From: Diplonema japonicum
Lineage: Eukaryota > Protista > Euglenozoa: Diplonemea
NCBI GenBank assembly: GCA_964019335.1
Contig: OZ025659.1
Location: forward strand, 744,001-808,000
Direction of reading: 5' to 3'
DNA length: 64,000 nucleotides
Positions 6,980-29,090 of this stretch are shown here, in pieces. Position 1 is the stretch's first letter; each line of letters starts with the position of its first letter. The notes under the pieces were generated by a model. The model made no database searches. It saw only the letters and a program-made list of their open reading frames with translations, and was not told the DNA's origin. A program made the translations under genes and the position numbers.

Positions 6980-9900
6980 ATGAACAAGGGGGGCGGTGCT
7001 CAACTGGGGACATGTCCCAGAACTGGGCTGCATTACCAGAACCTACCGAAGATGAAGCAGTTCAATGATAACCAATCGTTGCTGATGAAAGTGGTCGAAA
7101 AGAAGTCGAGCAAAGGGAAGCAGCAGAAGAGAGTGCTGGGGCTGCGCTTTGACTACTTGATTTTGAGCGAGCTGACGAACCCCCCAAAGGTGAAGAGATT
7201 CGTTAACGTAGGCCAGGTAAAGGAGGTACATTTCTTCGACTCCCCGAATAAGATAAGGACCACTGTGTTGAAGTTCCGACCCACAATCGACAAGCAGACG
7301 AAGCAGGAGCAGAACGAGGTGGATCTACAGTTCTGCCAGTCCGCCGACCCCAGGAATCCCTCGGACGGCCAGACAGAGTTCGTGGACATCTTGAAGCGGA
7401 TCGCAGAGGTTCGTAAGATCATCATCTCATACCACACAGCGACGTCTCTTGAGGAGCTCAGCAGGGCCAGCGCACTGCAGAAAGATAGAAAAGGCGGGTA
7501 CCAGTCACCTAATTTGATTTTAAAGGAAAGGAGGAAATCCCTCCCCCCCGAGCAAGGCGGTCTTCCTGCATCTCCCATTTCCAAGGTCTTCTCGTCTATG
7601 AGGAGCAGGTCTCAGTCATCCAGTCCAACAGGCAGCCGTACTGGCTCCCTGTCCCCCGCTAGCCCGAAGACCACAAACGGATCGCTACCGCCTCAGTCGC
7701 CCACGTCGCGTACGGCCCGTGGAAAGTCAGCACCTCCCTCCTCCGGTATTGAAGCAGACCCCGACTTCGGCGCGACTGTCGGCTCCGTGAACGGCTCATT
7801 CTCCTCCGTCCCTGGTTCCACCCGCTCCCGTACCGTTTCTATCGGTGTCTGCAATGAGGCTGAGCTCCCCCCAGTCATTGCCCCCCCCAAGGCACTCGCA
7901 TCGTTCAACGAACCGACCTTACGATTCATCAGAGTGGTTGAAAAAAAGAGCGCCAAAGGACAATTCCAAAAGCGTGTCATTGCCCTCACCCACTCAAAGT
8001 TGATCCTTGCAGAACTAAACTGCTCTATTAAGCGCTACTTGTCCTTCGAGTACATCGAGCACATCTACTACCAACCGAGGAGCAAGGTCAACGGGAAGAG
8101 GATCTACCAGTACCTTGTGAAGATCCCCAGCGAGGGGGTCGACATCCTCTTCCAGTTGTCTCATGATGACAGGAACGAGCAGAACGAAGACCAAGACGAG
8201 TTCCAGCGTGTCATCCGTCAGATCTTCACTGCGAGGTCGCTCAACATCCCGTTCGAACTGCTCCCTGAGCAGCCAGATTTGGTGCGAGAAGCACGGCTCC
8301 AGAAGCCGGAAGGATGGGTGAAGCCTGCACGAAAGGCCGCAGAGTCTCCGAACAGCCCGGCCAAGCAGCGTACCAGTTCCTGGTTTGGCGGGATGAGCAG
8401 GCGGAATTCGAAGCCTCCCGAGTCTCCCAAGTCGGTTAACACGAGTCTTCCGAGAGCGCGTCAAAATGCAGAGCACCCCGACTCTATCCCCGCCCCCGTG
8501 CTGGGTCCCGTGCCAACGAAGCAGAACGGAAACACACTTACAGCTAACAAGATACCTGACCAAGAACCTCTTGTCTCCGAGATCTATCAAGGGCTACAGG
8601 ATGATGAACAGGTCTTGTTCCGCGCCTTAGCGAATGTCAACACCAACCAGCAATGGTCTGACGTAAGGCGTCTGTTCAAACAGACGCACCCAGGTTTTCA
8701 CAAAGGCGACCCCATTGAGGCCATGCAGGCAGAGCTCCGAGGGAGAGACTACAAGAAGTGCGTAGATATCTTAAGCGGCAAAGGGATCACAATTGATGGA
8801 CCTTTGCTGAAGCCCGAAGAACGAGCAGCGAGCGCATGTTCTGGAGAGCCCTTGACGAGACTCAATAGCGCATTGAAGAGGCAGAAAAGTGACAAGGAAG
8901 AGGAGGTGTCCCCTCCTGTTTCACCATTTGTGCTGAGACACTCTGCGAACAAAGAAAGTGTCGCATTCTTGATTCAAGAGATACCACCTATCACGGTGCC
9001 TGCTGCCTTGCAGAGCGCATTCAACGACCCAAACACCGACGTGCTGTTCATCCGTGTTGTGGAGAGGGTGAGCAATACTGGGCACCAAGCACCTCGTGTC
9101 TTGGTGGTGACCCCTCACCATGTTATCGTGGCTACATTTATGGGGAGCATCAAGAGGTACATACCTTTGGAAAGCGTCCAGTCCGCTGTCATCACACGCA
9201 GCGCTGTTCGGCAGTATTTGCTGTGCGTGCCAAGCGAGGACAGCGATCTGCACTTCATCACATCGAACGACGAGAGAAACAGCGACGACTCCCAGACTTC
9301 CCTCAGGGACCTGCTTGTGAAACTCTTCCAACTCCGCTCCCTTCCTTTCTCAGTGCTTGAGGTTGCCGTTGAGGAGCTGAAGGAACACAAACGCTTGCCT
9401 GCCAAGAGAAGAGCGTCCATCGCACCTGCTGCTATGGACGGCGTGTGCTCCACGACAGGTCTCCCCACTACACCTTGTCCCGCACACCTAATGGAGTACG
9501 ACCTTCCTAATCTCCTTTATATTCGTATCGTGGAGTGCCGTAATGGGGACGAGCACAAGAAAGCTGTGCTATGCATTAACCACTCTACCCTAAAGTTGGC
9601 TACTGAGGGTGACAGAGTCAGCATCCAGGTGAACTCTATCACAGCTGTCATCACTCAGGTTATCGACCACTCTGGGGTCCCTGTCACCTTGTACTTGATC
9701 AGATCGGAGGGCGCCAAGGACATCCTGATCGCCCAGACTTATGACGAAAGGAACGCCAGTCATAACCAAGACACGCTTGGCGAGCTCCTGAAAGATCTCC
9801 TTGCCTTTTACAACAAGGAATTCGATGAACGTCAGCTGCCCCCCAGCGAAGACATCACGAAGCACGTCGACAGGGTGGCAGGGTCTGCAAAGACCAAGGT

Positions 9901-12900
9901 CGAACCTGAACAATCTGCTCCAGTCGAACAACAGCGCAAGGGGAGTGTGCCCCCCGGGCTTGCGATCATCGCGTCACCGCCAGAATTCCGACAGTTCAAC
10001 GCCTCCAACCTGCTGTACGCTAGAATTGTTGAAAAGATATCAGCAAAGGGCTTGAAGCAGAAGCGTGTTCTGATGCTGACTACTAGCAAGCTGATTGTAG
10101 CTGATGAGAAAGCGGGTGTCATAAAGAGGGAGATTCCTGCTGAGCTCATCACAGACATGTCTCTGCAACTCACGACAGTAAAACACTTCTTCAGCGGGAA
10201 GGAGGAAACCGTGTACACCATCTTGCTGCGCGTACCTAGCGAGGGACTCGACCTGTTGTTCGTGCAGTCGCATGATGCCCGAAACGCAAGTGACGATCAG
10301 GAGGAGTTCCCGAAGATCCTCCGCAGCCTCCTTGCACACCTGGATAAGTCTCTTGTGGAGAGGCACGTAGGGCCTTCGGAGAACATGTCTGAAAGCGCTG
10401 TGCTAAAGAGGGCAGACGGTCATAAAACTCCTGATAAGCATAGGGCCAAGGCTGTTGAGCTAAAGGAAGCAGAATCTGCTGTCGATGACATGTTCGCGAA
10501 CAAGGCACCTGCAGCCCAGCCGGCACCTACCCCAGTTCCTGCCTCAACTCAAGAACCTACCCAGGTCTCTGAAGAGAACACCACCCCTACTACTCCTCCT
10601 CCTATTCCTACACCTGCACCTATTCCTGCCCCTGTTCCTGTTCCTGTTCCTGTTGCTCAACTTGCAACACCTGCTCCTGAGCCTGTTGCTGCCCCTACCA
10701 CTGACTCCCCATCTGCTCACGTACCTGCTACCCCTGCGCCTGTTGTTCCAGTGCAAGAACCTTCAAGAGTGTCTACACCAGTTCAAGAGTCTTCTGCGCC
10801 TGAAACACAGAAAGAAACAGTCCCCATTCACCAAACAGTTTCCATCGAGGCGCAAGAACTAGAGAGGCTGAGGGAAGAGATTCGGGTGCTAAGGTCGCCC
10901 GAAAGGGACATGGAGCACGAGCAGCTGAAGCGGCAGCTGCAGGACGAGGTGGTGAGGTCCGAAGAGCTTAAGACGCTTGTTGAATATTTGCACAAGGAAA
11001 ACAATAGCAACAACGCGTCTCCAAGCAAGCCTGTGCGGGAGATCGACCCACTTGAGATGGAGAGGTTGCAGAATGAGATCCGTACTCTAAAGAAAGACAA
11101 GTCGGATGCAGAAAATAAATTAAGGTTAGCAAGGAACGCAGCGCACCAAGCCGCACTGGCGGAGGCAGATGCACCAATTTCGCCCACTTCATTGCAGCAA
11201 GTACTCCCTTCCAGCATGAGACCCAAGAAAGCACCTGCGGTTGACACAATTGTTGACTACAGCAAGCTGACTGAGGAATTCATCCTCCAGCTAACGCAAG
11301 CTGGCGTCGAACCCCACGAGATGTCTGTGTTCAACGTGCTGTCCATCAGGCAGGGCACCGACCTGCTCGATGCGTCGATTGCTGAGCTTAAGGAGTACTT
11401 GCCTGGCCCGCTGGTAAGACGGGTCTTGCGCATCGCAGGGTACCAGCCTGGGAAGACTGATTTCCACCCTTGCATCTCCATCAATGATGTCCCAGTAAGC
11501 AGCAGAAAGGAGGAAAAGGCGAGGAAGATAGCGCAGGAGAGGCTCCGCATCGTTCAGAGCGAGAACCAATCCTTGAAGGAGACAATCCTTATCCTCAAGG
11601 AGCAGATCAAGGTTCTGAGGGGGCAGCGGGGCATTCCACCTCCTGCAGGTGTTGCAGACTATGAGATGCCCTCCCCCACCACCTTCTCGTCGACCTCCTT
11701 CTCCCCCTCCCCAAGCCGCCCTCGTGAGGAAGAGCACATCGTGCCTGTTCACCACACACCCGTCCCCTCACCAACACCTTCCAAGGCAAAGCGAGACGTT
11801 AGTCAGGACAGAACATCCATTCGTGCTGGAAGCGAAGGAAGCAAGAGGAGTGGAAAGTCTGGAAAGTCAGCAAGGTCTGCCGAGCGAGCCAGGCTGAAGG
11901 CAGAGGCAGCCGCCGCACAGGAGGAGCTGGACAGACGCCTGAAGGAGGAGGAGCTTAAAAAAGCAGCTGCACGACAGCAGGAAGCCATACGCATGGAACA
12001 AATGGCGATCAAGGCGAAGAAAGCACACGAAGAGCTTGAAAAGAAGCGACGAGAAGAGAAGGAAGCGGAAGCCGACAGACAGAAGGCACGTGAGCTAGAG
12101 CTGCAGCAACAAAAACAACGAGAAGTAGAACAGCAGAGGCTGCAAGAAGAGCACGAAGAGGACGCCAGAAAGCTTCACGAGGAGCAACACAGACTGCAAG
12201 AACAGCAAAGACATGCTGACATAGAGCGAGAGAAAAGTACCACGCCTGAAAGGCTCGCCGCAACACCCCTGCTGCCAACGCTCATGTCGTCAACATTTGT
12301 ATGTAGCCACACCACGAACCACAAGCCACAGGACGAGAGCGATGTTCCTGAACCCGAACCCAAGCCTCCTGCGGAGCCTGTGAAAGAGCTGCTTCAGGAG
12401 GTTGTGCAGGAAGCTGTGCGGGAGAATGCAGAAGAGCATGTACACACTCCTGGAGATGCTGTGCAGCAGGAGATGCCCAAGGCACCGGAGGAAGATATTC
12501 AAGCTGCCATGCAGCAGGAGATGCCTAAGGTACCGGAGCCAGCACCTGAGGAGACTGTGCAATCGGAGCTGGAAAAGCCTGAAGAGCCTGTTGTGGAAGA
12601 AGCAGTCCCAACCACAGCAGCCACAGAGCCAGTGCGGGAGCTCGAGCAACAAGAAGTGGTGTCGGAAGCTTTGCCTGAGCGAAAAGAGCTCGAAAAGGTA
12701 TCCGATCCTGAACCCGAACTCGAACCTGTGCCCGTGGAAGAGGAGACAACAATGGCGGCGGTGGTGCCTGAGGAGCCCCCTGTTGAAATGGAAGAACCTG
12801 CGGTGCCCAAGGAGGATGTACCAGAGGAGCCTGTTCATGTGGCGGAAGTGCAAAACAAAGCGAAGACAGAGGTGCCGCCTATCAAGGTATTGCTTGTGGA

Positions 12901-13416
12901 CGACAGCACACAACGCACAGGACATGCCCACTAACGTGCCGAGTGAGATTGTGAAGAACCTGCCTGAGGGTGTGGAGGTATGTTGTTTAAGGACATGCGT
13001 CATGAACAACAGGTTGCGTCCAGCACATCATCCGAGTCTTGCACCAAGTACAGGCGCGCGTCGATGGTATGCCCTTTGCCGCCCCAACCTTAAAAAACCT
13101 TATGCAGGTGTCGATGTCTACGGTAAAGTCGGGCAAGTCGGCTAAGTCGAAGAACGGCGAGACACGGCAAAACGGGCACAGCGAGAAGGCTGAGGATACC
13201 CTGATGGCCATGGTGCTGAGCGAGGGTGTGGACTCTGATTTTAAAATACCCAGTGAGGGGTTTGAGGGTTTGGTATGTATCTTTAAGAACACGGGCCGTG
13301 TACAAAAAAAAAAAAAAAGAAAAAAAAAAAAAGGAACACATAAAACCGAACACTACTGTGGAAAGCAGCAGCTCCGAAGCGTAGACGCAAAAAGAGACAA
13401 AAAAACCTTTTCATAA
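6980..13416 (+). CDS. Large protein with five tandem PH-like (myosin TH1-like) repeats, Pro-rich linkers and coiled coil; introns 12299-12331 (in frame), 12887-12920, 12978-13012, 13067-13107; 3' end uncertain
   Basis: Repeated unit such as RVVEKKSAKGQFQKRVIALT...IKR...(S/T)xD(x)RN. Removing the introns keeps the frame open. A further GTATG at 13273 may start another intron. Confidence 0.7.
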
Positions 13417-16425: not shown

Positions 16426-16500
16426 ATGTTTACAGTCTGACACGAGACACATGACTTTTATTGCTTGTTGTGTTCTTCATGTTCACTCACACAGGTGGCA

Positions 16501-17826
16501 ATGGACCTCGATGGCACAACATGCATCCAAGTGTCCGACTGCCTCAAGGACCGCCACCCCTACAGTCGGAGCGACAGGGGAACGGTCATCAACAGCTCCA
16601 ATGGGTTCGGTCTTGGGGGCATTCAGGACAGCATCAGCACACTCGGAGCGAAAGAAGGGAAGTCTGTGAAACAAAAAGAAGAAGCTCTGGTGCACTTGTT
16701 GAGGAAGTTGTCCAGTGCCGAGATGAAGACGCGCCTTGTCTCGATGGGGTTGCTGCAAGGCTTGAAAGAGGTCACAACACCACCCGGCTCTCTTTCCTTG
16801 AAATGTGACAAACTTGCTTGCGATGCACTGCGGCAGCTGTCAGTGCTTCCCTCATGTATGGCAGACCTGTACGCCAACAACTGCGTCGAGATGGTGGTGG
16901 CCGTCCTGCAGCACCACACGGACCCCACTACACAGCTCGCAGCGTGCAACGCTTTGAAACAGATGTCGGAGATTTGGGACGGCAAAGCCTTGCTTCTAGG
17001 AGAGCCCCTCCCCGAGGGGATGGTGGAAATAGCTGATGATTTGCAGACAACGATGAAGCGGGACAACCTTGCCAGGGGCATCGTCGCAGCGCTGACTTCG
17101 ATCATTCTCCACGAGCACAAACCGCTGGTCACTGCTTCGTTGAAAACGTTGGCGAACCTCACAACCCTTGAGAAAGGGCTGCAGCATGCGTTGTGTGAGA
17201 ATGTGTTTGCAGACATCAACAAACTGCTTGAGAACACAAGTGCGTCGGAGGACTGGATGTTCAACGACGACGCGGTCGAGATCGTGCACCAGTCGGTTGT
17301 GGTGGTCTGGAACATTTCTCTGGACGACTTTGGGAAGGAAAGATCGTTAGAGCTCCCGCTTGTGCCGTACACATTGGGGCGGCTGCTGCACGCTGTGCTG
17401 AAGTACCCTGACAAGCTGATCAATGTGAAGGCGTCCATTGCAGGCGCCATCAGCGCCATGTACGTAAGGGCAGATGCCAAACGCACGTGCCTGACGCCCT
17501 TGCACGACCCACCACTTGTGGAGGCCGGTGCTGAGGTTGACTTGTGCGTACTACTTGTAAAACTGCTCAAGCAAGCGAACGCTCTGTATGGACCCATCCA
17601 AAAGGCTGTGAAGCATGGTGTGGACATCGATGACAGCAACCTCTCACACGTCACGTCGGTTATTGCAAACTGCAACCAGTGCATTAGGCTGCTTTCAGAG
17701 CTGCCGTGTGCGCGCAAGAGGGTCAAGTCGATCTTGGAGAATGAGGACATCTACATACGCAGGCAAATCTTCTATGGAACACACTTCGAAGCGGAATTCT
17801 TACCGCAGGGGGTGAAGACCTATTGA
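16501..17826 (+). CDS. Armadillo-repeat protein, possibly radial spoke RSP14-like
   Basis: Helical ARM pattern (ACDALRQLS, ACNALKQMS, SLKTLANLT, VVWNIS). The RSP14 resemblance is from recalled N-terminal similarity only. Confidence 0.6.
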   Translation: MDLDGTTCIQVSDCLKDRHPYSRSDRGTVINSSNGFGLGGIQDSISTLGAKEGKSVKQKEEALVHLLRKLSSAEMKTRLVSMGLLQGLKEVTTPPGSLSLKCDKLACDALRQLSVLPSCMADLYANNCVEMVVAVLQHHTDPTTQLAACNALKQMSEIWDGKALLLGEPLPEGMVEIADDLQTTMKRDNLARGIVAALTSIILHEHKPLVTASLKTLANLTTLEKGLQHALCENVFADINKLLENTSASEDWMFNDDAVEIVHQSVVVVWNISLDDFGKERSLELPLVPYTLGRLLHAVLKYPDKLINVKASIAGAISAMYVRADAKRTCLTPLHDPPLVEAGAEVDLCVLLVKLLKQANALYGPIQKAVKHGVDIDDSNLSHVTSVIANCNQCIRLLSELPCARKRVKSILENEDIYIRRQIFYGTHFEAEFLPQGVKTY

Positions 17827-17907: not shown

Positions 17908-19237
17908 ATGCGCCCCGTTCAGAAGTGGTTGGTGCTTGCTGCCTTTTGCTACAACACGGCATGTAATTCTTTCATGTTCATGGACTTTGCCACTGTCGGA
18001 GAGTATGTAATAACAAGAAGCCACATGACACCCGCACAGTGTTTCGAAAGAGGAGTTCGGTATTGGTGACTCCGCCTTGAACTGGCTGTACTCCGCGTCG
18101 CTTCTGTCGGTGCTGCCCATTGCTTTCCCCGTGTCGTTCTACCTAAACAAGTACAACATGCTGACAACTGGCTACGGCGTGTGTATGAATGTGCTAGGCG
18201 GGTGGCTGAGGTACTTCTCTGCAGTGCATTCGAACTACACTCTTGCTGTGATATCCTCGATCGCTATTGGGCAGGGCGCTGGTGTTATCATCACCTCTGT
18301 TGCGCACGTCCCGCAGAGTTGGTTCCCCAAACAGACGAGGATGCTCGCAACGTCGATTGGTGTGCAGGCCAACTACGCAGGGTGGTGCCTGGCGACTGTG
18401 CTCCTGCCGTACACAATCAACAATACGGCCGATCTGGAGCGCCTGCTTCTCATTCAAGCCATCATTGTGTCGGGGGCATTTGTGATGTTCATAGCGTTCC
18501 ACAGGGCTCCTCCGGCTGAAGTCGGAACCAGCAAGAGCCTCACAACTAAGGACGCAGTCAGCAATAACTTGCCGTTCTTTGCAGAGTTCTCGCGAGTCAT
18601 CAAGGAGCTTGCTTACAACAAGAAGTTCCTTGTGGAGCTGATTGCCTTCTCCATCCTGGGTGGGGTGTCCTTCACCATCCCCGCTGTGCAGGGCGAAGTG
18701 TTCGACAACTTTGACACGAAAGAGACAGCGTGGACCAACTTTGCGTTTGTTTTCTCTGGTGTTGTGGGAGGGCTGATCTTCGGCACCGTAAAACCGGAGT
18801 ATGTGGACAGAATCATCACCGCATGCTTCGTGTTGTGCAGCGTGGGGCTGACGTTGCTGGTGGCGCTGTCGTATGTCCCGTCGGAGCACATCTCCTTTAA
18901 GACACAGTACATTCTATCGATTATCCTGATGGCGGTGTCGGGGTGTTCGTCTCTTGGGTTCATTGGGCCGGCTCTTAGCAAAGCCTGCAGAAACGCGCAT
19001 CCAATCAGCCATTCATGGTCAGGGGGTGCAGTTGAGTGGTGGATCCAGTTGTGGGGCACTGGGCTGACGCAGATGTCAGTCGTCGTGAATTTCAGCGGGT
19101 GTGCGGTGTCAGCCATCCTTGGGACCATCTTGATCCTGGCTGAAGACTCCATCGTAGGGAACAACAACGAAGATGGCGAAGCCCTTGCACACATCAACGA
19201 GGTAGCACATGAAGAAGAAGATGGGATCGAGAGCTAA
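17908..19237 (+). CDS. MFS transporter (FLVCR/SLC49-like); intron 18003-18039
   Basis: About 12 hydrophobic segments; KWLVLAAF, NWLYS, GGWLRY and SWFPKQTRMLATSIG motifs. Splicing joins the two ORFs in frame. Confidence 0.8.
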
Positions 19238-19601: not shown

Positions 19602-20693
19602 GCGAGGTCACTTACCCCGACTTTGCATCACAATCACCTCTTTTTTATTTTCTCATTTGGCGAAAATCCTCCGTTATTTTTAGAAGAAAAATAGTGGGGG
19701 GAAGAAGGTAGCAACACGCGTGTGGTACCTGGCACGGGTAGTGGTTTTCTCTTTTTTTTTTTGTTCTGTTTGTGGTCTCCTAACACCCCCTTCCCTCCCT
19801 CCTCCCTTTTTTTAAAAAATACTGCTAATGGGAACTTTCTGGGGTCGTTCTGAGTCATTTTGGCTACTGAACGCAAGGAGGGGGACACTTCACCCGATTT
19901 ATTTTCCCTTTCGCAGCAAACAAAGAAAAATCGGAAGATATAAAAGTTGTTAAAATGGGGAATGTATACAAAAAAAGAAAAAAAGGCACGTTGTAGTTGC
20001 ATTTCCTGTGTGAAGATTTAATTAAAAAAGGGGGAACGAATGCAAGAGAAAACAAGGAAAGGGAAGGATGATAATTAGGTAGGCGAAAAATCGTTCACCT
20101 TTATACGTGCTTGTGCTAGTGTTTTTCTTTTCTTTTTTTCCTATTCTTCTTTAACCTTCCTGTGCCCACTGCTGACTGGTTTTCACCTTTTTTTCGCTTT
20201 AAAAAATGGAATTCTTGCATTCTCAAAGAAACTGGCCCTTTCAGATGAACACCAAAAGAAGAATTAGAAAAGTAGGGCCCAGACTTTTCAAAGTAAGTTT
20301 TCAATCGTCCAAAAAAAAAAAAATGATTTTTTTTTGGACGAAGGGGTGCAGGAAGGTTAAATGCTTTGTTGTGTGATCGTGTTTTTTTGTCTGTTTGTTT
20401 TGTGCGTGTTTTAGGGCAGCTCCACAGGCAGTTTACTTCCCCCCCCCCCCCCCCCTCCCTATTTTTTAGTAAAGTGCCACCTCACTTCATTTCTATGTCA
20501 ATGGTGAGGCACACAGCCATGCTGCTCCATCAAACAAGCACGGCGTGCCGGCCTCCTGGACGTAGCCCTACAATTAATACTCAGCATAAGGTAGCTACTT
20601 ACGGTGTTTCGTAAGTTTGTTTGGTCTCTTTCCGCTCTTTTTATACTTCCACCCTTTCGCACCCTTCACTGTCTCGCAGGGTTATCAAGCTAC

Positions 20694-23056
20694 ATGGCAA
20701 CATCTCCACGTGCGTCGGGCACCCTGAGTGCTGGCAAGATCTCATACCAGGAGGTGAAGGAGCACAACAAGCCTGAAGACTGCTGGATGATTATCTGCGG
20801 AAAGGTCTACAACTTGACCTCCTTCGCAAGCGAACACCCGGGCGGTGAGGCCGTCGTGACGGAGCAGGCCGGGCTTGACGCGACAGAGCCCTTCCTCCAC
20901 GCACACCCCGAGAGCATTATGAAGCTCACCCTCGGCCCCAAGGGTCTCCAGGAGTGCTACGTCGGCGATGTGGACATGGCCACTGTCCCCGATGATGCAA
21001 AGAAGGCCACCAAAGTCGCTGCCGTGGCCCCCGAGGCCGTCCTGGACCCCGTCCCTCCTATTGAAGCGGTCCTCAACCTCCATGACATAGCGGCCATTGC
21101 ACAGAACAAGATGCTTGCAACGGGCAAGAAGCAGGCGTGGGATTATTACTCCTCCGGCGCAGACGACGAACTCACCTACAATGAGAACGTGAACGCCTTC
21201 CAGCGCATCTGGCTCAAGCCACGTATCATGGTGAACGTCGCGAACGTGAACACGGAGGCTACCATGCTCGATGTGAAGGCAAAGTTCCCCGTTTACCTAT
21301 CTGCTGTGGCAATGTGCGGCATGGGGCACTCAGACGGTGAGTGCGCCTGGATGCGAGGCGCAGCTGCCGCCAACGTGCCCTTCATGATCCCCAACCTGTC
21401 GTCGAAGCCTTTTGACGAAATTGTGAACGCCTCGGCACCCGGGCAGGAGTCGTGGTTCCAGATCTACGTCAACCCCGACAAGAGCGTTGTAGCGGAGCAG
21501 CTGGTAGCACTTGAGAAGGCAGGTGTGAAGGCTATCTGCCTGACTGTCGATTCTGCTGTCCCGGGGAAGAGGGAGCGTGACTTGAGGAACAAGATCGCGA
21601 TGCAGCTCGGTCAGCAAAAGCAGCAGTCGGCCGCAGCAAGCAACACCAAATCGAGGAAGGCAGGGAACTACGCCAACAGAGACCCTGCTCTTAACTGGGA
21701 AGACCTTGCGTGGTTCAAGGAGCACACCACGATCCCTATTGTCCTGAAGGGTGTCCAGTGCGCTGAGGACGCGCTCCTTGCTGCCCAGCACGGGTGCAAG
21801 GGTATCGTCCTCTCCAACCATGGTGGAAGGAACTTGGACACCAGCCGAGCAGGTATTGAGGTTCTGCCTGAGGTGATGGAAATCCTGAGGGAGAACAAAC
21901 TTGAGGACAAGATCGAAGTTTACGTCGACGGTGGCATCAGGAGGGGGACGGACATTCTGAAGGCGCTCGCTCTGGGTGCCAAAGGTGTGGGTCTTGGGAA
22001 GCCTGCTGTCTATGCCATGTATGCTATTTTTTTCCAGAAGTAATCTTACGCAAAATAAACCACAGGTCTGCCTACGGTCATGAGGGTATTACGAAGATGG
22101 TGAATATCTTGCACGAAGAGCTAATCAAAGCCATGCAGCTGTGCGGTGCCACATGCATTGCTGACTTGAAGCCTTCAATGGTGAACCTCAAGTCGCTGAC
22201 CAACCATGTCGACGTGGCACCCATCCCACCCAGCCCCTTCTCGCACGCACCTCCTGTGAAGAACGTGAGGAACCCAAGCGTTGAGGAGAAGAAGAGTGCG
22301 GATCAGATTGTAGCGGAGATCAAAACACTGGAGAAACAGCTTGCTTCGATGGGCGAGAGGGACAGGCATCCTTCGGTCATACCGACGGGGAACATCCTGC
22401 TGTTTGCCACCGCTATGGGCAAGGGCCTGGCGTCATCTATCTTCTCCACTACCCCTGCAGGGTGTCTTCACAGGTCGGCAGTGTTCCTTTTCTTCTTCCT
22501 CATCATACACGCGATGACTAACGCTTCTGTGTTCCTCGGCGGCGATGTGTTCAACGGTGCTTGCCACCTCATCAAACAGAACCCTCTTACGGTGTTCTTT
22601 GAGTACTACCTGCTCCTCGGAGCAGGGCTGCACACCCTTGTGGCGCTGTACTTTACTAAGAACAAGATTAACTACATCATGAAGAACCCCCTGCAGAACG
22701 GGAGGTTGATGCTCAGCTCGATCGGAATTTCAGTGTTCTTGCTGATGCACCTTGACCACTTCAGGTTTGGGGACATTAAGGTTAACGAGGCCGGGCAGCA
22801 CGATTTCTACGCCATGCAGCAGCAGGTGTTCGCGGACCCAGTCAATGTGGTGCTCTACTCATTGGGTTCTGTTGCTTTCCTCGTCCACCTTCAGGCGGGC
22901 TGGCCCAAGACTGTCCTAAAGATGGCCCTCCCTGACACGCAGAGGAAGATCGTTTCTGAGATGGGCCAGGCCCTCGTCATGCCACTCTGCCTCCTTTACT
23001 GCGTCATCCCCGTTATGATCTTCTTGACCTCCAGCGGTTACACAGAGAGCAACTGA
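20694..23056 (+). CDS. CYB2: Flavocytochrome b2 (L-lactate dehydrogenase: cytochrome b5 + FMN alpha-hydroxy acid dehydrogenase) fused to a C-terminal SdhC b558-type membrane cytochrome b; intron 22019-22065
   Basis: HPGG b5 motif; YYSSGADDE, LTVD, KGVQ, SNHGGR and DGGIRRGTD motifs. The splice restores YAMSAYGHEG. The C-terminal TM domain has four spaced His (IIHAMTN, GLHTL, LMHLDHF, LVHLQ). Confidence 0.88.
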
Positions 23057-23360
23057 GGAAACTGATTACGATTACACGTTGATTGACAGGCAGCGCTGTT
23101 CCCACAAGAAATAAAGAAATAGAAAAAGAAATTTTTGACCGATTAATCCCTTTCCGTCATCAACAAAAGCGATTTTCTTTCCCCCCCCCCTTTTTTTTCA
23201 TTGTACCGAGACATTTCCCTCCAAAACTCGGAAAGAAAAAGAGAAAAAAAAGCGGAAATACATACTCCCAGGATGGAGGGCAGCTGGTATTGCTCCCCTT
23301 TGAAAAAGCAGAGTTTTCATTTTTTTATTTTCTTTTCTTTGGACTTTGAACCCTTCTCCG

Positions 23361-23391
<31 letters not shown>

Positions 23392-23808
23392 TTTATTGTT
23401 CCCAGCATACAAAGACCATCATGTGTTGACAGGGATCGACAAACTCCAAAGTGAATGTCTTGAGCTCCCTTTCCTATTGTGCCGTTTCGCTTTTTTTATG
23501 TTTGGCATGGCGTGTAGTATGTCAGCTTTTTTCTTTCCCTTTTATTTTGTTTTCTTTTTTATGCTTTCCCCCCCGCTCCTCATTTTGTTCCCGTGTCCCT
23601 GCCATGGCAGTGGTTATTTTTTCGGATTTCCTTCAGATAGAATTCGGTACAAAGAAAAAAGCTGCAGTACTCGTGCTCCAGCAGTCTCTTGGCATACCCA
23701 CATAAAGTCTGGACACGAAAAACCAAAAAATAATTCCATCCACTTCGTATTCGCTTTTGCAGCCTTCTGCCTGCACCCCTTACCCTTACCCTTGCCAACA
23801 GATGCAAC

Positions 23809-26739
23809 ATGGAAGAGTATCTTGCTATACGTGACCGAGAATGGGGCCAGCAGATCACGCAACACGAAATAGACCAGAAGGCAGAGAAAAGAAAAGTACG
23901 GGAAAGCGTGCAGCTAAAATCTAAGGACAAGACTATGACGAAGCAGATAGCAGGGGCTATTCTGTTGGGTGTGATCAGGACTCGTGTATTCAACATTCAG
24001 CAAGTGGAGGACCTGAAGAAACAACAACGGCAACCTCGACAGAGTCCCACCTCCCCGCAACGCACCTGGAAGCCGCCGAGCACCATACACCGCACACCAT
24101 CTCCCACGTTAGTCACACCAACACCCCCAGACCTCAACAGCATTCAAGGCGCCTCGTTCATTCCCACTCCACCGAAGCCAAGGGCGAAGCCCCCCAAAAA
24201 GAAAAAAACTGAAAAGACAAAAAGTGCGACACCACAAATGCCGAGTAAACGGAAAGCCCCGCCGACGCTGCCACGGTCTTTGGAGCCGTGCAGTGACCTC
24301 GCCTTGCGGGAAGCGCTCGAGGATGCGTTCACCGAGAGGGAGCAGGGCATGGTGGATAATTCCTTTAAAAGGTCGTGCGGGGGTCTGCTCGTGCAGCGCC
24401 CCGTGAGAAACAGCAGAGTGATGCTGCGAAAGAGAGGAGTGTCGTTCAACCCCAAGGTGGTCCACAGCATGTTTACCATGACGCGGAAGGGGTCTTTGGT
24501 GCCGGATGACATGATGGACACGCTGGCTAAAGTCATTGTGAAAGATGGTCTGGGCTTGGCAGAGCTGTACTTGAGCCTGCAACAAGTAAGGGCAACTACC
24601 ATGACTTGTGTTGATAATAGGGAGGCTACAAAGGCTCTGAAGTACGCGCTGAACTGGAGGGCTGAGGAGCAGAAGCGGTGTGGAGAGGACTTCTACAACA
24701 CAGTGCGGTATAAGTGCTTGCTGTCATTCTCGTCGAATGTCATCATGCAACTGTTCTGCTGGGTAAGCAGAGCACGTGCTGCCACTGCAAAAAGGCGAAA
24801 GCTTCTAAGCTTGATGAATGCCAGGACGCTGTGCAAGTCTTTTAACTTCTGGGCGCGTTCGGTACGTGCAATGGGGCATTACTGTCATCAGTTGCTGAGG
24901 AGATGCTTCGTGGCGTGGCGTTCGCCCTTGAACCTGAACCTGAACCTGTCCCTTTCTCAGACCATGTCCCTTCACGTGCCTGCCCGGCTCAGTGTGTCTC
25001 CACGTTTTTCAGTTGTTGCAATGAGGAACAAAAAGTCGAAAGCAGTGGTGAACAGGCTCGATGTCGTAACTGCTCCATTTCATGCTTGGGCAACCACTGC
25101 AAAGATGAGGGCAACTAACCTCGAGAGCCTGATGAAACAGTTCCAAAAGAGGTCCTGCTTCTCCTTTGCCGATAGGAGCGTCGTGTGGTGTTGTTTTATT
25201 GCTATGAGGGACACCGTGCGGTACTCGACAAAGACGCTGTCACAACAGGTGGCAGTGGTGCGCAACAAAGGCTTGCTGCGGAGGTCGATGCGGGCCATGC
25301 GGACAACGTATATGGTGTGCATCGCGAACCAGCAGCATCAAAAGAAAATAGTACATAGTGCCTTGCAGCTGTGGAGGTATGAACTGTATCAGCTGAAAGT
25401 AGGAAGGATCTTGGCCCACACTTGCGCGGAGTCCGTATCGTTGCTAAAAAGGAATCACGCATGGGACACATGGCGCACAAAGTACCTACGATATGTGGCA
25501 CTCAGAACGCAAGGTGCGGTGAAGCAAACGCAGAAGGAAGGGATGCTGATGCCTTACGTTCTGATACTGTTGAATGACAACAGGAAACACGCAGTCATGT
25601 GTTGGAAGAACTGGCGCTTTTTTGTCACCAAAAGGAAACGGACGGCAAGCTACTTCAAAGAAGCTCAGATGCAGATGGACAGATTTGTGTTGCTGACCCT
25701 CTTCCAACGATGGCGTGGGAGGCCGCTCAATGTACTTGGCCCCTTGTCGGGCAGCAAGGTACTGTACTACGTGGAAAAGGAGATGGAGAAGAACAGCGTC
25801 TTTCTTCCCCACTTATATACAATGGAATTGATGAGCCAAATGAAGACAGATGCCGTGTGCATACTGAACAAGGTGATGCAGTTCATGCGGCTCCAAACAA
25901 TGATCCTCAAGGCACAGCAGGTGGTCCTGTCCCGAGTGCGTATTAAGAACCAAGACGCCATTGAGGAGCCCAGGACACAACGTCCCAGTGTGTCCACTCA
26001 TGATACAAACGAGAGACCTTGCCCCCTGCAGACTGCTCTGCACCTCAATCGTGTGCCTTCGACGACGAAGATAGACTTGCTCATATTGCAAAATTGTGAA
26101 AGAGTGAAGAAGAAAAACCACGTTGTGAAGGAGCTTTTGGACGCCGCGCAGAAGCTGATGAGAGAGCGGGGGGCTGTGGATCTGCGTGCACAGCTCATCG
26201 CAACAATGACTGCAAACAGGCGCAAACAAACTGCTATTGCTATGGTTAGCATAGCCTCGTTCGCAAGGACTGAAGGCAACATCATCATGGCACGAAACTG
26301 CCAGCTGGAGCCAGAGACTCGTAGCTTGCCTGCCGATGCCGCCTTCTATTTCCCATTGTGTACCTCGGAATGTCTCGGTGATGGTAGTCGTCGCAGCTCG
26401 AAATGTGATACCATTTTACAAAGCCCCCACGTTCTTCCAGTGGAATCAAAAAGCACTCCATGGTATCCTGCGAGCGCAATGCAACAGTCATGCAAACCGA
26501 TACGGCACAGTAAGTACAAGATGCAGAGATGTGCTTTGCCTGCTCCACCCACGTTAGTCGGTGTGCTCGTGCCTCCTGTTGTCTCATTCAAGCAGCATAT
26601 AACATACAAGATGAAGCCCGCCGCCAAGCCTAAGAGTCCAAATCACATGGAAGTACTTGCCAGCATGAGCCCTGATAGTTCTTTTACCCCTTCTGTGGCT
26701 GCTGATTTAACAGACACGGAGCCGTCTTTGTTGCTTTAA
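23809..26739 (+). CDS. Basic helical protein with Sfi1-like Trp repeats
   Basis: 976-aa ORF with recurring (F/W/L)xxW(R/A) units: FNFWAR, FVAWR, FHAWA, LQLWR, WDTWR, WKNWR, FQRWR. Confidence 0.55.
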   Translation: MEEYLAIRDREWGQQITQHEIDQKAEKRKVRESVQLKSKDKTMTKQIAGAILLGVIRTRVFNIQQVEDLKKQQRQPRQSPTSPQRTWKPPSTIHRTPSPTLVTPTPPDLNSIQGASFIPTPPKPRAKPPKKKKTEKTKSATPQMPSKRKAPPTLPRSLEPCSDLALREALEDAFTEREQGMVDNSFKRSCGGLLVQRPVRNSRVMLRKRGVSFNPKVVHSMFTMTRKGSLVPDDMMDTLAKVIVKDGLGLAELYLSLQQVRATTMTCVDNREATKALKYALNWRAEEQKRCGEDFYNTVRYKCLLSFSSNVIMQLFCWVSRARAATAKRRKLLSLMNARTLCKSFNFWARSVRAMGHYCHQLLRRCFVAWRSPLNLNLNLSLSQTMSLHVPARLSVSPRFSVVAMRNKKSKAVVNRLDVVTAPFHAWATTAKMRATNLESLMKQFQKRSCFSFADRSVVWCCFIAMRDTVRYSTKTLSQQVAVVRNKGLLRRSMRAMRTTYMVCIANQQHQKKIVHSALQLWRYELYQLKVGRILAHTCAESVSLLKRNHAWDTWRTKYLRYVALRTQGAVKQTQKEGMLMPYVLILLNDNRKHAVMCWKNWRFFVTKRKRTASYFKEAQMQMDRFVLLTLFQRWRGRPLNVLGPLSGSKVLYYVEKEMEKNSVFLPHLYTMELMSQMKTDAVCILNKVMQFMRLQTMILKAQQVVLSRVRIKNQDAIEEPRTQRPSVSTHDTNERPCPLQTALHLNRVPSTTKIDLLILQNCERVKKKNHVVKELLDAAQKLMRERGAVDLRAQLIATMTANRRKQTAIAMVSIASFARTEGNIIMARNCQLEPETRSLPADAAFYFPLCTSECLGDGSRRSSKCDTILQSPHVLPVESKSTPWYPASAMQQSCKPIRHSKYKMQRCALPAPPTLVGVLVPPVVSFKQHITYKMKPAAKPKSPNHMEVLASMSPDSSFTPSVAADLTDTEPSLLL

Positions 26740-26809
26740 AACATTTACACCGAATTCTTTTTTTAATTGTTCCTTTAATGTGACTCGGCGATATCCACAA
26801 ATAGGAAAC

Positions 26810-27673
26810 ATGGACGCCTTGAAGAAGTACGCCATCGCTGGTTCGCATGAGCTCATCGACATTGGGGCCAACATCACACGCCTGCCTGCGGCAGAGCTGA
26901 CGATGCAGATGCAAAGGGCCGCCGCTGCAGGGGTGAAGCGAGTGATCATCACGGGGACAAGCGTGAAGGCGTCGCAGGCCGCTGAACGGATGGTACAACG
27001 GAACATAAGCGGGGTGCAGCTGTTGTACACAGCAGGGGTCCATCCCCACGACGCGCACACATGGAGCGATAGGGCAAAGAGCATCATCACGCGCATGCTT
27101 ATGAACAAAGACTGCGTAGCGATAGGGGAGATGGGCCTAGACTACGATAGGATGCGATCGACGAAAGAGCAGCAGCTGCAAGTATTCAGGGAGCTGGTGA
27201 GCATTGCTACCACCACCGATAAGCCCTTGTTCATCCACGAGAGAGACCTTGATTCAAACAGGGGTGCGCCTTTGGGTTCTCACGATGACTTAGTAGGCAT
27301 CCTCACTGAGTACAAGATTGACCCGTCGAGGGTGTGCATCCATTGCTTCACGGCGAGCGAGGCCGCGTTGAAGGATTACGTGTCTAGAGGGTACTACATT
27401 GGTATCACAGGATTTGTGGGGATGAAGACACGAGGTGCCGCCCTGCGTGCCGCTTGCACACACATCCCACTCGACAGGCTGATGGTGGAGACAGACGCAC
27501 CGTATATGAAGCCTGACAACATCCCTTCTGATATCGGCATCAAAGGACGCAACAACGAGCCTTGCACACTGCCCTCCGTGGTGCGCACCCTTGCTAGTTG
27601 TTACGGAGAGGAGGACAGCAAGATAGCAAATGCTGTCACAGCAAACACCAAGCGATTCTTTAATTTGGCTTGA
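26810..27673 (+). CDS. tatD: TatD-family DNase
   Basis: IDIGANI, TAGVHPH, AIGEMGLDYDR, FIHER, CIHCF and ETDAPY motifs. Confidence 0.92.
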   Translation: MDALKKYAIAGSHELIDIGANITRLPAAELTMQMQRAAAAGVKRVIITGTSVKASQAAERMVQRNISGVQLLYTAGVHPHDAHTWSDRAKSIITRMLMNKDCVAIGEMGLDYDRMRSTKEQQLQVFRELVSIATTTDKPLFIHERDLDSNRGAPLGSHDDLVGILTEYKIDPSRVCIHCFTASEAALKDYVSRGYYIGITGFVGMKTRGAALRAACTHIPLDRLMVETDAPYMKPDNIPSDIGIKGRNNEPCTLPSVVRTLASCYGEEDSKIANAVTANTKRFFNLA

Positions 27674-28167: not shown

Positions 28168-29090
28168 ATGGGCATCGAGGTGAAGAAGAAGCCGATGGCG
28201 GTTGATAACCTTCTGGTTGGAGCTGTGGCTGATTTGATAAAAATCACAACGTTGGGGCAGCCTTTCAAGGTTCTCAAAACGCACATGGGCGTCGAGAGGC
28301 GGGATGGACTGATGAAGAGTATGCAGATAGCCTACGGCCGGGGGGGCATCAGGGGCTTCTACCAGGGCCTACTTCCCTGGGGCTGGGTGGAGTGCTCTAC
28401 GAAAGGGGCTGTGTTACAAGTGACATCAAGCGAGGTGGAGTATATTCTGTTGTCAAACAAGCTGAACCCAGGCACTAGCGGCATGATCGCAGGCATGGCA
28501 GGAGGCATAGCCCAGTCGTACACCACAATGGGCATCACAACATTCATGACGACAGTTGAAGTGACGCGAGCGAGGGGTGGCGGCAGTGCGTCCACCATGG
28601 CAGTGGCCAGGGATGTGGTGAAGCGAGATGGGATACGAGGGATGTACAGGGGGGTGCATGCTCTGGCAATACGGCAGATGACAAACTGGGGAAGCAGGTT
28701 CGGTATCGCTCGTGCAACAGAGTCGTTTATACAGCAAGTGAAGCAGAAGAACGGGAAAAGCGCAAAGAAAGAACCTTGGGAGAAAATAGTCGCAAGTTGC
28801 GTGGGCGGTGCCCTTGCATGCTGGAACAAGTATGGTAACTTTTGCTCAAAACACACAACAGCCCTATTGAGGTGATTCGCGTAGAGCAGCAGAAAGCAAC
28901 CACTGTCGAGGCGGGGAAGTTCGTAAGTATATCATCGGCTACGAAGACCATCTTCGTGCGCGATGGCTTCAAGGGTTTCTTTAAGGGTGTGGTCCCTCGG
29001 GTGGCCTTGAGCGTGTGGGCAACGGTGGCACAGGTGGCGGGGGGTGACCATCTGAAGGAGATGTTCAACAACTTTAAGGAGAGCCGGTAA
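28168..29090 (+). CDS. YHM2: Mitochondrial carrier, YHM2 (citrate/2-oxoglutarate) subfamily; intron 28830-28861
   Basis: TTLGQP, YQGLLPW, STKGAVL and RQMTNWGSRFG motifs. The splice restores WNNPIEVIRVE. Confidence 0.85.

What the first reader, a model, noticed from the sequence alone, without database searches (positions are those of the whole stretch)
20694..23056. Flavocytochrome b2 fused to a bacterial-type di-heme SdhC anchor: candidate single-chain L-lactate:quinone oxidoreductase
Seen: removing one 47-nt GTATG..CAG intron, which restores the conserved YAMSAYGxxG motif, gives one ORF. It runs cytochrome b5, then FMN alpha-hydroxy acid dehydrogenase, a linker, and a ~190-aa multi-TM domain (about 22460-23030) with four His on successive helices. 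Known: canonical Cyb2 is soluble and reduces cytochrome c. This His spacing and the HxxxN..F...FN..NP and Y...F.DP...LY...HL..G patterns are typical of the b558 (type B) SdhC/FrdC anchors that carry two hemes and react with quinones. Inference: an electron wire FMN to b5 to two b hemes to quinone, possibly using a low-potential quinone or forming a transmembrane redox loop, with the anchor gained by horizontal transfer. No long Cyb2-type presequence is evident.
Basis: partly seen in the sequence, partly recalled or inferred. Interest (0 to 1): 0.88.

Follow-up and report, generated by a model that had tools for sequence, protein, structure and literature searches.

The report
Lactate dehydrogenase fused to two-heme membrane anchor
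A marine diplonemid flagellate makes one spliced mRNA for a lactate-oxidising flavocytochrome b2 joined to a bacterial-type two-heme succinate-dehydrogenase membrane anchor, an uncharacterised enzyme design that probably feeds lactate electrons into the membrane through hemes alone.

Summary
A transcript contig from the same organism starts with the spliced leader at 20679/20680, skips exactly 22019-22065 (47 nt, GT..AG) and runs to 23170. Two DNA runs keep the 47 nt. The product reads cytochrome b5, then an FMN L-2-hydroxyacid dehydrogenase (best solved relative: yeast flavocytochrome b2, E 9e-104), a linker, and a five-helix C-terminal domain.

That domain is homologous to bacterial type-B SdhC/FrdC:
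- TIGR02046 matches at E 9e-12, but below NCBI's cut-off.
- A direct phmmer search reaches true bacterial SdhC.
- The predicted fold matches Chloroflexus SdhC at Z 20.3.
- Four near-invariant His align with its four heme ligands.

The fusion is conserved in at least five diplonemid genera and occurs in other protist data. Sister fusions join the same anchor to cytochrome b5 alone or to a fumarate-reductase flavoprotein plus b5. This genome has one copy and no soluble b2.

The function is inferred: most likely a membrane-integral lactate:quinone oxidoreductase (FMN, b5, two b hemes, quinone). Transmembrane electron transfer to another acceptor is a serious rival. Classical menaquinone genes were not found. 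A bacterial origin is plausible but old, and the donor is unresolved. I found no paper describing this.

The parts
20441..20679 (+). Upstream polypyrimidine tract (C/T run 20441-20466) and the trans-splice acceptor AG at 20678-20679
   Evidence: Sequence. The X9 transcript contig starts at 20679, preceded by the spliced-leader tail. The leader 23-mer occurs 214 times in the genome.
20680..20693 (+). 5' UTR of 14 nt; the ATG at 20694 is the first ATG of the mRNA
20694..22018 (+). Exon 1: 441 codons plus 2 nt of a split Met codon
20745..20972 (+). Cytochrome b5 heme domain (aa 18-93), with HPGG and a second His ligand
   Evidence: Pfam PF00173 at 5.6e-22. Alignment to 1FCB.
21126..22018 (+). FMN-dependent 2-hydroxyacid dehydrogenase barrel, first part (aa 145-441), with the Cyb2 catalytic and pocket residues
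   Evidence: PF01070 at 7.5e-99. 1FCB at 9e-104 with the residue alignment.
22019..22065 (+). Spliceosomal intron, 47 nt, GTATG...CAG, phase 2
   Evidence: Skipped exactly in the contigs of X9 and X1 and retained in the DNA runs X4 and X8.
22066..23056 (+). Exon 2, including the stop TGA at 23054-23056
22070..22186 (+). Last part of the FMN_dh barrel (profile positions 311-349)
22187..22453 (+). Linker of about 90 aa: a conserved PIPPSP motif, a predicted long helix, then an amphipathic helix lying before TM1
   Evidence: Consensus of A2. Models.
22454..23032 (+). Five-helix type-B SdhC/FrdC-like di-heme domain (TM1 to TM5)
   Evidence: TIGR02046 at 9e-12. Model pLDDT 94.3. Z 20.3 to 9lay_C. 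Profile hits at 1.4e-34 and 5.7e-17.
22508..22510 (+). His (TM1), aligned with distal-heme ligand His32 of Chloroflexus SdhC
   Evidence: PMC12663545.
22631..22633 (+). His (TM2), aligned with proximal-heme ligand His81
   Evidence: PMC12663545.
22748..22750 (+). His (TM3), aligned with distal-heme ligand His135
   Evidence: PMC12663545.
22886..22888 (+). His (TM4), aligned with proximal-heme ligand His188
   Evidence: PMC12663545.
23057..23170 (+). 3' UTR, at least as far as the transcript contig reaches
   Evidence: record 30.

Best explanation
This is a nuclear gene of a Diplonema-like diplonemid. It encodes one roughly 771-aa polypeptide that I read as a membrane-integral L-lactate (2-hydroxyacid) dehydrogenase.

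Proposed mechanism:
- L-lactate is oxidised at the FMN barrel, as in yeast flavocytochrome b2.
- Electrons pass one at a time to the mobile N-terminal cytochrome b5 domain.
- Instead of going only to soluble cytochrome c, b5 hands them to the proximal b heme of the fused five-helix type-B SdhC domain. In that reading b5 takes the place of the SdhB iron-sulfur wire.
- The electrons then move to the distal b heme and to a quinone bound in the membrane domain. The quinone site is most likely on the distal side, because the proximal site of complex II needs SdhB.

Shown: the transcript structure, the identity of the three modules, the conservation of the catalytic and heme-ligand residues, and the fold.

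Inferred: heme occupancy, b5-to-anchor electron transfer, quinone as acceptor, the membrane in which it sits, and whether the reaction is electrogenic.
For: One mRNA:
- It is SL-trans-spliced and cis-spliced.
- The SL is confirmed as a 214-copy genomic element.
- Orthologous complete transcript ORFs of 741-799 aa exist in Diplonema ambulator, Flectonema, Artemidia, Lacrimia and Hemistasia, and D. papillatum has a gene model.

b2 module:
- 1FCB matches at E 9e-104 over the b5 and FMN domains.
- The aligned Cyb2 residues are kept: Tyr143, Tyr254, Asp282, Lys349, His373 and Arg376, plus the lactate-pocket residues Ala198 and Leu230.

Anchor:
- TIGR02046 matches at E 9e-12.
- phmmer against 1.84 billion proteins reaches bacterial SdhC proteins that score 117-182 bits on TIGR02046.
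- The AF2 model has pLDDT 94.3.
- It matches Chloroflexus SdhC at Z 20.3, rmsd 2.6 A over 194 residues, and Wolinella and Desulfovibrio FrdC at Z 14-15. The next fold scores 7.9.
- The four His are kept in 85, 92, 91 and 92 of 92 family members. They align to His32, His81, His135 and His188, the axial ligands of hemes bD and bP (PMC12663545).
- Other residues shared with bacterial SdhC lie on the distal side: N42, N53, E69, D136 and Y154 (TM-piece numbering: residue 1 is the codon at 22397).

Links to quinone chemistry and to b5:
- The same anchor is fused to FAD_binding_2 plus b5 (fumarate-reductase type). Such an enzyme would need a membrane electron donor such as a quinol.
- Every multi-domain eukaryotic architecture that could be read contains a b5 domain.
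- Lys and Arg are commoner in the two loops on the side where the b2 module is attached. That is the side where SdhAB sit in bacteria.
Against: - No biochemical datum exists, and quinone binding cannot be read from the sequence.
- TIGR02046 and Pfam Sdh_cyt both score below their curated cut-offs (45 vs 96 bits; 20 vs 25.8 bits).
- Close relatives of the b2 module (57% identity) carry a eukaryotic cytochrome b561 domain instead (P0029, P0030). That family moves electrons across membranes to non-quinone acceptors.
- The full-length model of the orthologue has pTM 0.60 and I could not read coordinates. No b5-to-anchor contact or His-His distance was measured.
- Localisation is unknown. There is no long presequence, and 17 residues precede the b5 domain.
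- The b5 domain could still reduce cytochrome c, as it does in yeast.
Confidence: 0.5

Rival explanations
1. Transmembrane electron shuttle. The two stacked b hemes carry electrons from lactate oxidised on one side of a membrane to a non-quinone acceptor on the other side. Candidates are ferric chelates, monodehydroascorbate, or cytochrome c in the intermembrane space. The analogy is with cytochrome b561, Dcytb or NOX-type proteins.
For: - b2 modules 57% identical to this one are fused to a Pfam Cytochrom_B561 domain (37-38 bits, above the cut-off of 23) in P0029 and P0030. That suggests the two kinds of two-heme membrane domain are interchangeable.
- There is no mitochondrial-type presequence.
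- Conserved polar residues cluster on the far (distal) side.
- After the SdhC/FrdC (and SdhD) chains, the next folds in the structure search are cytochrome b561 and Dcytb (Z 7.4-7.8). This is weak evidence.
Against: - The distal-side residues conserved here are the ones shared with bacterial quinone-reactive SdhC.
- Known type-B anchors all react with quinones.
- The sister fusions with a fumarate-reductase flavoprotein are most simply explained by quinol as the donor.
Confidence: 0.25
2. Tethered classical cytochrome b2. The enzyme still delivers electrons from b5 to cytochrome c. The SdhC-like domain mainly holds it on the membrane, and its hemes play a side role such as electron buffering or regulation.
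For: - The b2 module keeps all Cyb2 catalytic and heme residues.
- This is the only b2 gene in the genome, so it must also cover any Cyb2-type function.
Against: - A mere anchor would not need four invariant His, nor about 15 further conserved positions shared with bacterial SdhC across very divergent protists.
- The same domain recurs with other b5-containing modules.
Confidence: 0.15
3. Not one protein: two neighbouring genes, a pseudogene with a frameshift, or an assembly error at 22019-22065.
For: A plain ORF scan gives two ORFs, 20604-22043 and 22097-23056.
Against: - Transcript contigs from two studies remove exactly the 47 nt, which have GT..AG ends. One contig spans from the spliced leader to the 3' UTR.
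- The FMN_dh profile continues across the joint.
- Orthologous transcripts are collinear.
Confidence: 0.02

Closest known systems
Yeast flavocytochrome b2 (Cyb2, L-lactate:cytochrome c oxidoreductase; PDB 1FCB)
   Same: It has the same b5 plus FMN-barrel order. It matches at E 9e-104 over aa 12-441. The catalytic Tyr/Tyr/Asp/Lys/His/Arg and the pocket residues Ala198 and Leu230 are conserved.
   Different: Cyb2 is a soluble intermembrane-space protein with a long bipartite presequence and no membrane domain. This protein has no such presequence. It adds a linker of about 90 aa and a five-helix, four-His domain.
Type-B di-heme anchor of bacterial succinate:menaquinone reductase / quinol:fumarate reductase (SdhC b558 family, TIGR02046; Chloroflexus aurantiacus 9LAY chain C, Wolinella succinogenes FrdC, Bacillus subtilis SdhC)
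   Same: It has the same five-helix fold (Z 20.3 and 14-15). The four axial His are in the same helices and registers. The N42, N53, E69, D136, Y154 and G168 signature (TM-piece numbering: residue 1 is the codon at 22397) is shared.
   Different: It is not a separate subunit beside SdhA and SdhB. It is fused behind a flavocytochrome in a eukaryote. It scores below the family cut-off. It has eukaryote-specific basic residues on the proximal face (R26, K171, K175). No iron-sulfur partner is evident.
Bacterial FMN-dependent L-lactate:quinone oxidoreductase LldD
   Same: It has a homologous FMN barrel, and the overall reaction I propect is the same: lactate to membrane quinone.
   Different: LldD is a peripheral, heme-free protein that reduces quinone directly from FMN. 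The match here is 164 bits against a cut-off of 550, and three hemes are interposed.
Formate dehydrogenase-N (FdnGHI) and similar redox-loop enzymes
   Same: The concept is the same: a soluble dehydrogenase module wired through two stacked b hemes to a quinone site on the opposite membrane face.
   Different: The membrane subunit fold is unrelated. Those enzymes use iron-sulfur wiring and are multi-subunit. The resemblance is functional analogy only and was not tested.

Membership tests
Flavocytochrome b2 (Cyt-b5 + FMN_dh) | N-terminal b5 domain with two His heme ligands | tested here: met
   PF00173 matches at 5.6e-22 over aa 18-93. EHPGG and FLHAHP align with the His43 and His66 regions of 1FCB.
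Flavocytochrome b2 (Cyt-b5 + FMN_dh) | FMN barrel with catalytic Tyr143, Tyr254, Asp282, Lys349, His373 and Arg376, and lactate-pocket residues Ala198 and Leu230 | tested here: met
   In the alignment to 1FCB all of these positions are identical. His, Arg, Asp and Lys are invariant in 32 fusion proteins.
Flavocytochrome b2 (Cyt-b5 + FMN_dh) | Soluble intermembrane-space protein with a long bipartite presequence | tested here: not met
   The spliced leader is added 14-15 nt before the first ATG. The N-terminus aligns with residue 7 of the 1FCB chain. A five-helix membrane domain is present.
Flavocytochrome b2 (Cyt-b5 + FMN_dh) | Reduces cytochrome c | not testable with these tools
   This needs an enzyme assay.
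SdhC/FrdC b558 family (type B anchor, TIGR02046) | Score above the curated family cut-off | tested here: not met
   It scores 45.1 bits against a cut-off of 96, at E 9e-12. Pfam Sdh_cyt scores 20.4 against 25.8.
SdhC/FrdC b558 family (type B anchor, TIGR02046) | Single polypeptide with five transmembrane helices in the type-B fold | tested here: met
   The AF2 model has pLDDT 94.3. It matches 9lay_C at Z 20.3 and FrdC chains at 14.3-14.6; the next fold scores 7.9.
SdhC/FrdC b558 family (type B anchor, TIGR02046) | Four axial His ligands (TM1 and TM3 for heme bD; TM2 and TM4 for heme bP) | tested here: met
   H38, H79, H118 and H164 of the TM piece align to His32, His81, His135 and His188 of 9lay_C. 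This also holds with a profile that lacks the ten sequences of the bacterial clade of the tree. They are kept in 85-92 of 92 members. The geometry in the model was not measured, because no coordinates were available.
SdhC/FrdC b558 family (type B anchor, TIGR02046) | Works as the anchor of SdhA/SdhB and is encoded with them | tested here: not met
   It is fused to a b2 module. The neighbouring genes are unrelated: a TatD DNase, a mitochondrial carrier and ORFs without a Pfam match.
SdhC/FrdC b558 family (type B anchor, TIGR02046) | Binds quinone | tested here: inconclusive
   The conserved distal-side residues E69, D136 and Y154 are shared with bacterial members. D136 lies next to the position aligned with the menaquinone-contacting Tyr159 of Chloroflexus (PMC12663545). 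There is no direct test.
LldD-type L-lactate:quinone oxidoreductase | Score above the NCBIfam cut-off; heme-free peripheral enzyme | tested here: not met
   NF033901 scores 164.6 bits against a cut-off of 550, and heme domains are present.

The most novel reading that the evidence does not exclude
Marine protists carry a so far undescribed class of iron-sulfur-free, single-chain respiratory enzymes. In these, a cytochrome b5 domain replaces SdhB as the wire between a soluble flavoenzyme and a bacterial-type di-heme SdhC anchor. This gene would be the lactate:quinone member, possibly an electrogenic half redox loop. The sister fusions (fumarate-reductase flavoprotein + b5 + anchor) would be single-chain quinol:fumarate reductases. 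Because diplonemids are among the most abundant heterotrophic flagellates of the ocean, this could be a quantitatively important entry of lactate or hydroxy-acid electrons into their respiratory chains, and it needs less iron-sulfur cofactor.
Probability: 0.35. Interest if true: 0.85.

Novelty: new variant of a known kind. Interest (0 to 1): 0.72.

Why it matters
- Both modules are textbook proteins, but their union predicts an enzyme type I did not find described. It would be a eukaryotic lactate dehydrogenase that enters the membrane through three b hemes and no iron-sulfur clusters.
- As far as I know, it would also be the first type-B (bacterial, di-heme, single-subunit) complex-II anchor working in eukaryotes, and it does so outside complex II.
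- The fusion is the only b2-type gene in this genome. It is conserved across diplonemid genera, so it is likely the route by which these abundant ocean heterotrophs respire lactate.
- The wider family (b5 + anchor; fumarate reductase + b5 + anchor; a five-b5 protein in Perkinsus marinus) suggests a modular toolkit.
- The idea is directly testable, because Diplonema papillatum is genetically tractable (PMC8611851).

Tried and rejected
1. The search for homologous proteins with the 219-aa anchor alone found nothing. This is a limit of the word index. The full HMMER scan found 230 relatives.
2. phmmer of the anchor alone against PDB sequences found nothing. Profiles were needed.
I therefore could not read the gene context of the stand-alone 190-290-aa homologues, so whether they are bacterial, eukaryotic or fragments stays open. 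I also could not check whether the 460-aa model P0008 stops at the same intron.
No broad bacterial sample was obtained and the donor lineage is unresolved.
5. Menaquinone as the partner quinone: menA gave no hit, and menB and menD gave only paralogue-level hits far below their cut-offs. The classical pathway is not supported. The futalosine route and rhodoquinone (RquA) were not tested.
6. A canonical Sdh_cyt elsewhere in the genome: none was detected. This is uninformative, because (from general knowledge) euglenozoan complex II anchors are very divergent.
7. The exons were never joined into one typed or built protein. Every search was done exon by exon by reference. The full-length fold was done on the natural orthologue P0001, but pTM is 0.60 and no coordinates were readable, so no inter-domain distance was obtained.
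8. Eight literature searches found no description of this fusion. The D. papillatum metabolism paper lists other lactate dehydrogenases and does not mention cytochrome b2. The Perkinsus complexome paper does not mention the five-b5 protein.
Full report
**1. What is in the sequence**

The window is a stretch of same-strand, almost intron-free ORFs separated by pyrimidine tracts. That is the layout of euglenozoan polycistrons. The best named relative of the gene is 'Cytochrome b2 [Diplonema papillatum]' (P0007, 774 aa, 70% identity to exon 1). The best overall is a Diplonema ambulator transcript ORF (P0001, 779 aa, 83%). The organism is therefore a diplonemid close to Diplonema. The assembly G000 has 62.5 Mb in 132 contigs.

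- The ATG is at 20694 and exon 1 runs to 22018.
- The intron 22019-22065 is 47 nt, GTATG...CAG.
- Exon 2 runs from 22066 to the TGA at 23054-23056.
- Exon 1 aligns to P0001 residues 1-442 and exon 2 aligns from 444. The residue between is the Met of the split codon.
- The Pfam FMN_dh profile runs 6-308 in exon 1 and 311-349 in exon 2.

**2. Transcript evidence**

Read laying put four runs on 20400-23400.
- Run X9 (organism C, study P6) has a 2484-nt contig with no mismatch. It starts at 20679, joins 22018 to 22066 (GT..AG, 47 nt skipped) and ends at 23170.
- Its unaligned 5' end reads GCTACAGTTTCTGTACTTTATT. With a final G, this 23-mer occurs 214 times dispersed in G000, and its reversed control occurs 0 times. 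From general knowledge, it also resembles the euglenozoan spliced leader.
- The mRNA is therefore trans-spliced at the AG at 20678-20679, which is 14-15 nt before the ATG, and cis-spliced once. It carries all three modules.
- Run X1 (another study, about 98.5% identical) shows the same joint.
- Runs X4 and X8 carry the 47 nt, as genomic DNA would.

All four runs are contigs, so they show the presence of the spliced form, not expression levels.

**3. The b2 module**

Cyt-b5 matches at 5.6e-22 and FMN_dh at 7.5e-99. The best solved relative is yeast flavocytochrome b2 (1FCB, E 9e-104, aa 12-441 against 7-438).

In that alignment the following match:
- the b5 ligand motifs;
- catalytic Tyr143, Tyr254, Asp282, Lys349, His373 and Arg376;
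- pocket residues Ala198 and Leu230.

From general knowledge, Ala198 and Leu230 set L-lactate preference in Cyb2. L-lactate is thus a reasonable, but inferred, substrate.

G000 has no second b2. The next FMN_dh hit is 29% identical and covers only the FMN-dehydrogenase part of the query.

**4. The membrane domain**

Sequence evidence:
- TIGR02046 (sdhC_b558_fam) matches exon 2 aa 139-283 at E 2.7e-11 to 9e-12. The score of 45 bits is below the cut-off of 96.
- A full phmmer scan of 1.84 billion representatives with exon 2 gave 230 hits.
- Among them are proteins that score 117-182 bits on TIGR02046. One cluster is named succinate dehydrogenase cytochrome b subunit of Flavobacteriales.
- The ESM Atlas neighbours are all bacterial b558 SdhC.

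Structure evidence:
- An AlphaFold2 model of the domain has pLDDT 94.3 and pTM 0.88, with five long helices.
- By VIA-align it matches Chloroflexus aurantiacus SdhC (9lay_C) at Z 20.3, rmsd 2.6 A over 194 residues.
- Desulfovibrio gigas and Wolinella succinogenes FrdC score Z 14.3-14.6. The next fold scores 7.9. Foldseek gives the same first hits.

Heme ligands:
- In 92 near-complete family members the four His are kept in 85, 92, 91 and 92 sequences. Their codons are at 22508, 22631, 22748 and 22886.
- They align with His32 and His135 (distal heme) and His81 and His188 (proximal heme) of the solved Chloroflexus enzyme (ligands from PMC12663545).
- The alignment also holds with a profile that leaves out the bacterial clade (E 5.7e-17).

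Other conserved residues (TM-piece numbering: residue 1 is the codon at 22397):
- N42, N53, E69, F114, D136, Y154 and G168 are shared by eukaryotic and bacterial members. Most lie on the distal side.
- R26, W169, K171 and K175, on the proximal face, are specific to the eukaryotic fusions.

**5. The family**

The b5-FMN_dh-anchor architecture (about 740-840 aa) is found in these sources:
- Diplonema ambulator, D. papillatum, Flectonema neradi, Artemidia motanka, Lacrimia lanifica and Hemistasia phaeocysticola;
- a Picozoa single-cell assembly;
- many marine metagenome and metatranscriptome contigs.

The same anchor also follows other modules:
- a lone b5 (P0185, P0226, P0240);
- five b5 repeats in Perkinsus marinus (P0254, annotated 'succinate dehydrogenase, putative');
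- a fumarate-reductase-type FAD_binding_2 domain plus one or two b5 (P0222, P0230, P0244).

In a quick ML tree the bacterial SdhC form one clade (SH-aLRT 100). The b5/FRD fusions form another (100). The b2 fusions group together, with fragments interspersed. This is compatible with one eukaryotic origin, but the bacterial sample is only ten sequences.

Two proteins whose b2 module is 57% identical to this one carry a eukaryotic cytochrome b561 domain instead (P0029, P0030).

**6. How it most likely works**

By charge, the two loops on the N-terminal side of the anchor hold more Lys and Arg. So the b2 module sits on the 'inside' face, where SdhAB sit in bacteria, next to the proximal heme.

The simplest path is FMN, b5, bP, bD, quinone. 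The proximal quinone site of complex II is built with SdhB, which is absent here. The conserved residues shared with quinone-reactive bacterial anchors are distal. A distal site is therefore favoured. All of this is inference.

Lactate/pyruvate lies near -190 mV (general knowledge). It can therefore reduce ubiquinone, rhodoquinone or menaquinone.

Classical menaquinone genes are not detectable in G000. The D. papillatum paper states that that species makes menaquinone (PMC8611851).

The membrane, the orientation and any electrogenicity are unknown.

**7. Rivals**

- Transmembrane transfer to a non-quinone acceptor is kept alive by the b561 variants.
- A tethered Cyb2 that still reduces cytochrome c cannot be excluded.
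- The two-gene or artefact reading is refuted, as far as contigs allow.

**8. Novelty**

Eight literature searches found no description. Automatic annotation already labels fragments as 'b558 family' and the whole protein as 'cytochrome b2'. The parts are therefore visible in databases, but I found no discussion of the enzyme. I file it as a new variant of known kinds.

**9. Limits**

- The exons were not joined. All searches were done exon by exon by reference.
- The full-length fold used the natural orthologue P0001 (pTM 0.60).
- No model coordinates could be read, so the heme geometry rests on alignment to 9LAY.

Noticed in passing
P0029, P0030 (metagenome proteins, 768 and 776 aa): Their b5 + FMN_dh module is 57% identical to this gene's. 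It is fused to a eukaryotic cytochrome b561 domain (PF03188, 37-38 bits) instead of the SdhC-like anchor. This is a second, independent way of joining b2 to a two-heme membrane domain.
   Followed up: partly
P0222, P0230, P0244; P0254 (Perkinsus marinus XP_002784279.1); P0185, P0226, P0240: The same SdhC-like anchor follows FAD_binding_2 (fumarate-reductase type) plus b5, five tandem b5 domains, or a single b5. These form their own well-supported clade in the tree. They are candidate single-chain quinol:fumarate reductases.
   Followed up: partly
G000, genome-wide (for example C1:315922-315944; nearest copy C12:811893-811915, about 3.9 kb beyond the window's end): The spliced-leader 23-mer GCTACAGTTTCTGTACTTTATTG occurs 214 times on many contigs, dispersed or in small clusters rather than in one array.
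   Followed up: no
G000: No menA match was found. The menB and menD hits are only paralogue-level, far below their cut-offs. A published statement says that D. papillatum makes menaquinone. The futalosine route and RquA were not checked.
   Followed up: partly
window 26780-27670, 28168-28872, 6980-12931: The same-strand neighbours are a TatD-type DNase, a mitochondrial carrier protein and a large protein with a weak, sub-threshold match to the myosin TH1 tail domain. The ORFs directly flanking the gene (16465-17823, 18077-19234, 23809-26736) have no Pfam match.
   Followed up: no
P0008 (460 aa, from a 1.83-Mb contig of another diplonemid-like genome): This gene model is 74% identical to exon 1. 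Its length (460 aa) is close to the 450 aa expected if the caller read exon 1 into an unspliced intron. That hints that the intron position is conserved.
   Followed up: no
The intron confirmed here has such a donor (GTATG at 22019).
   Followed up: no
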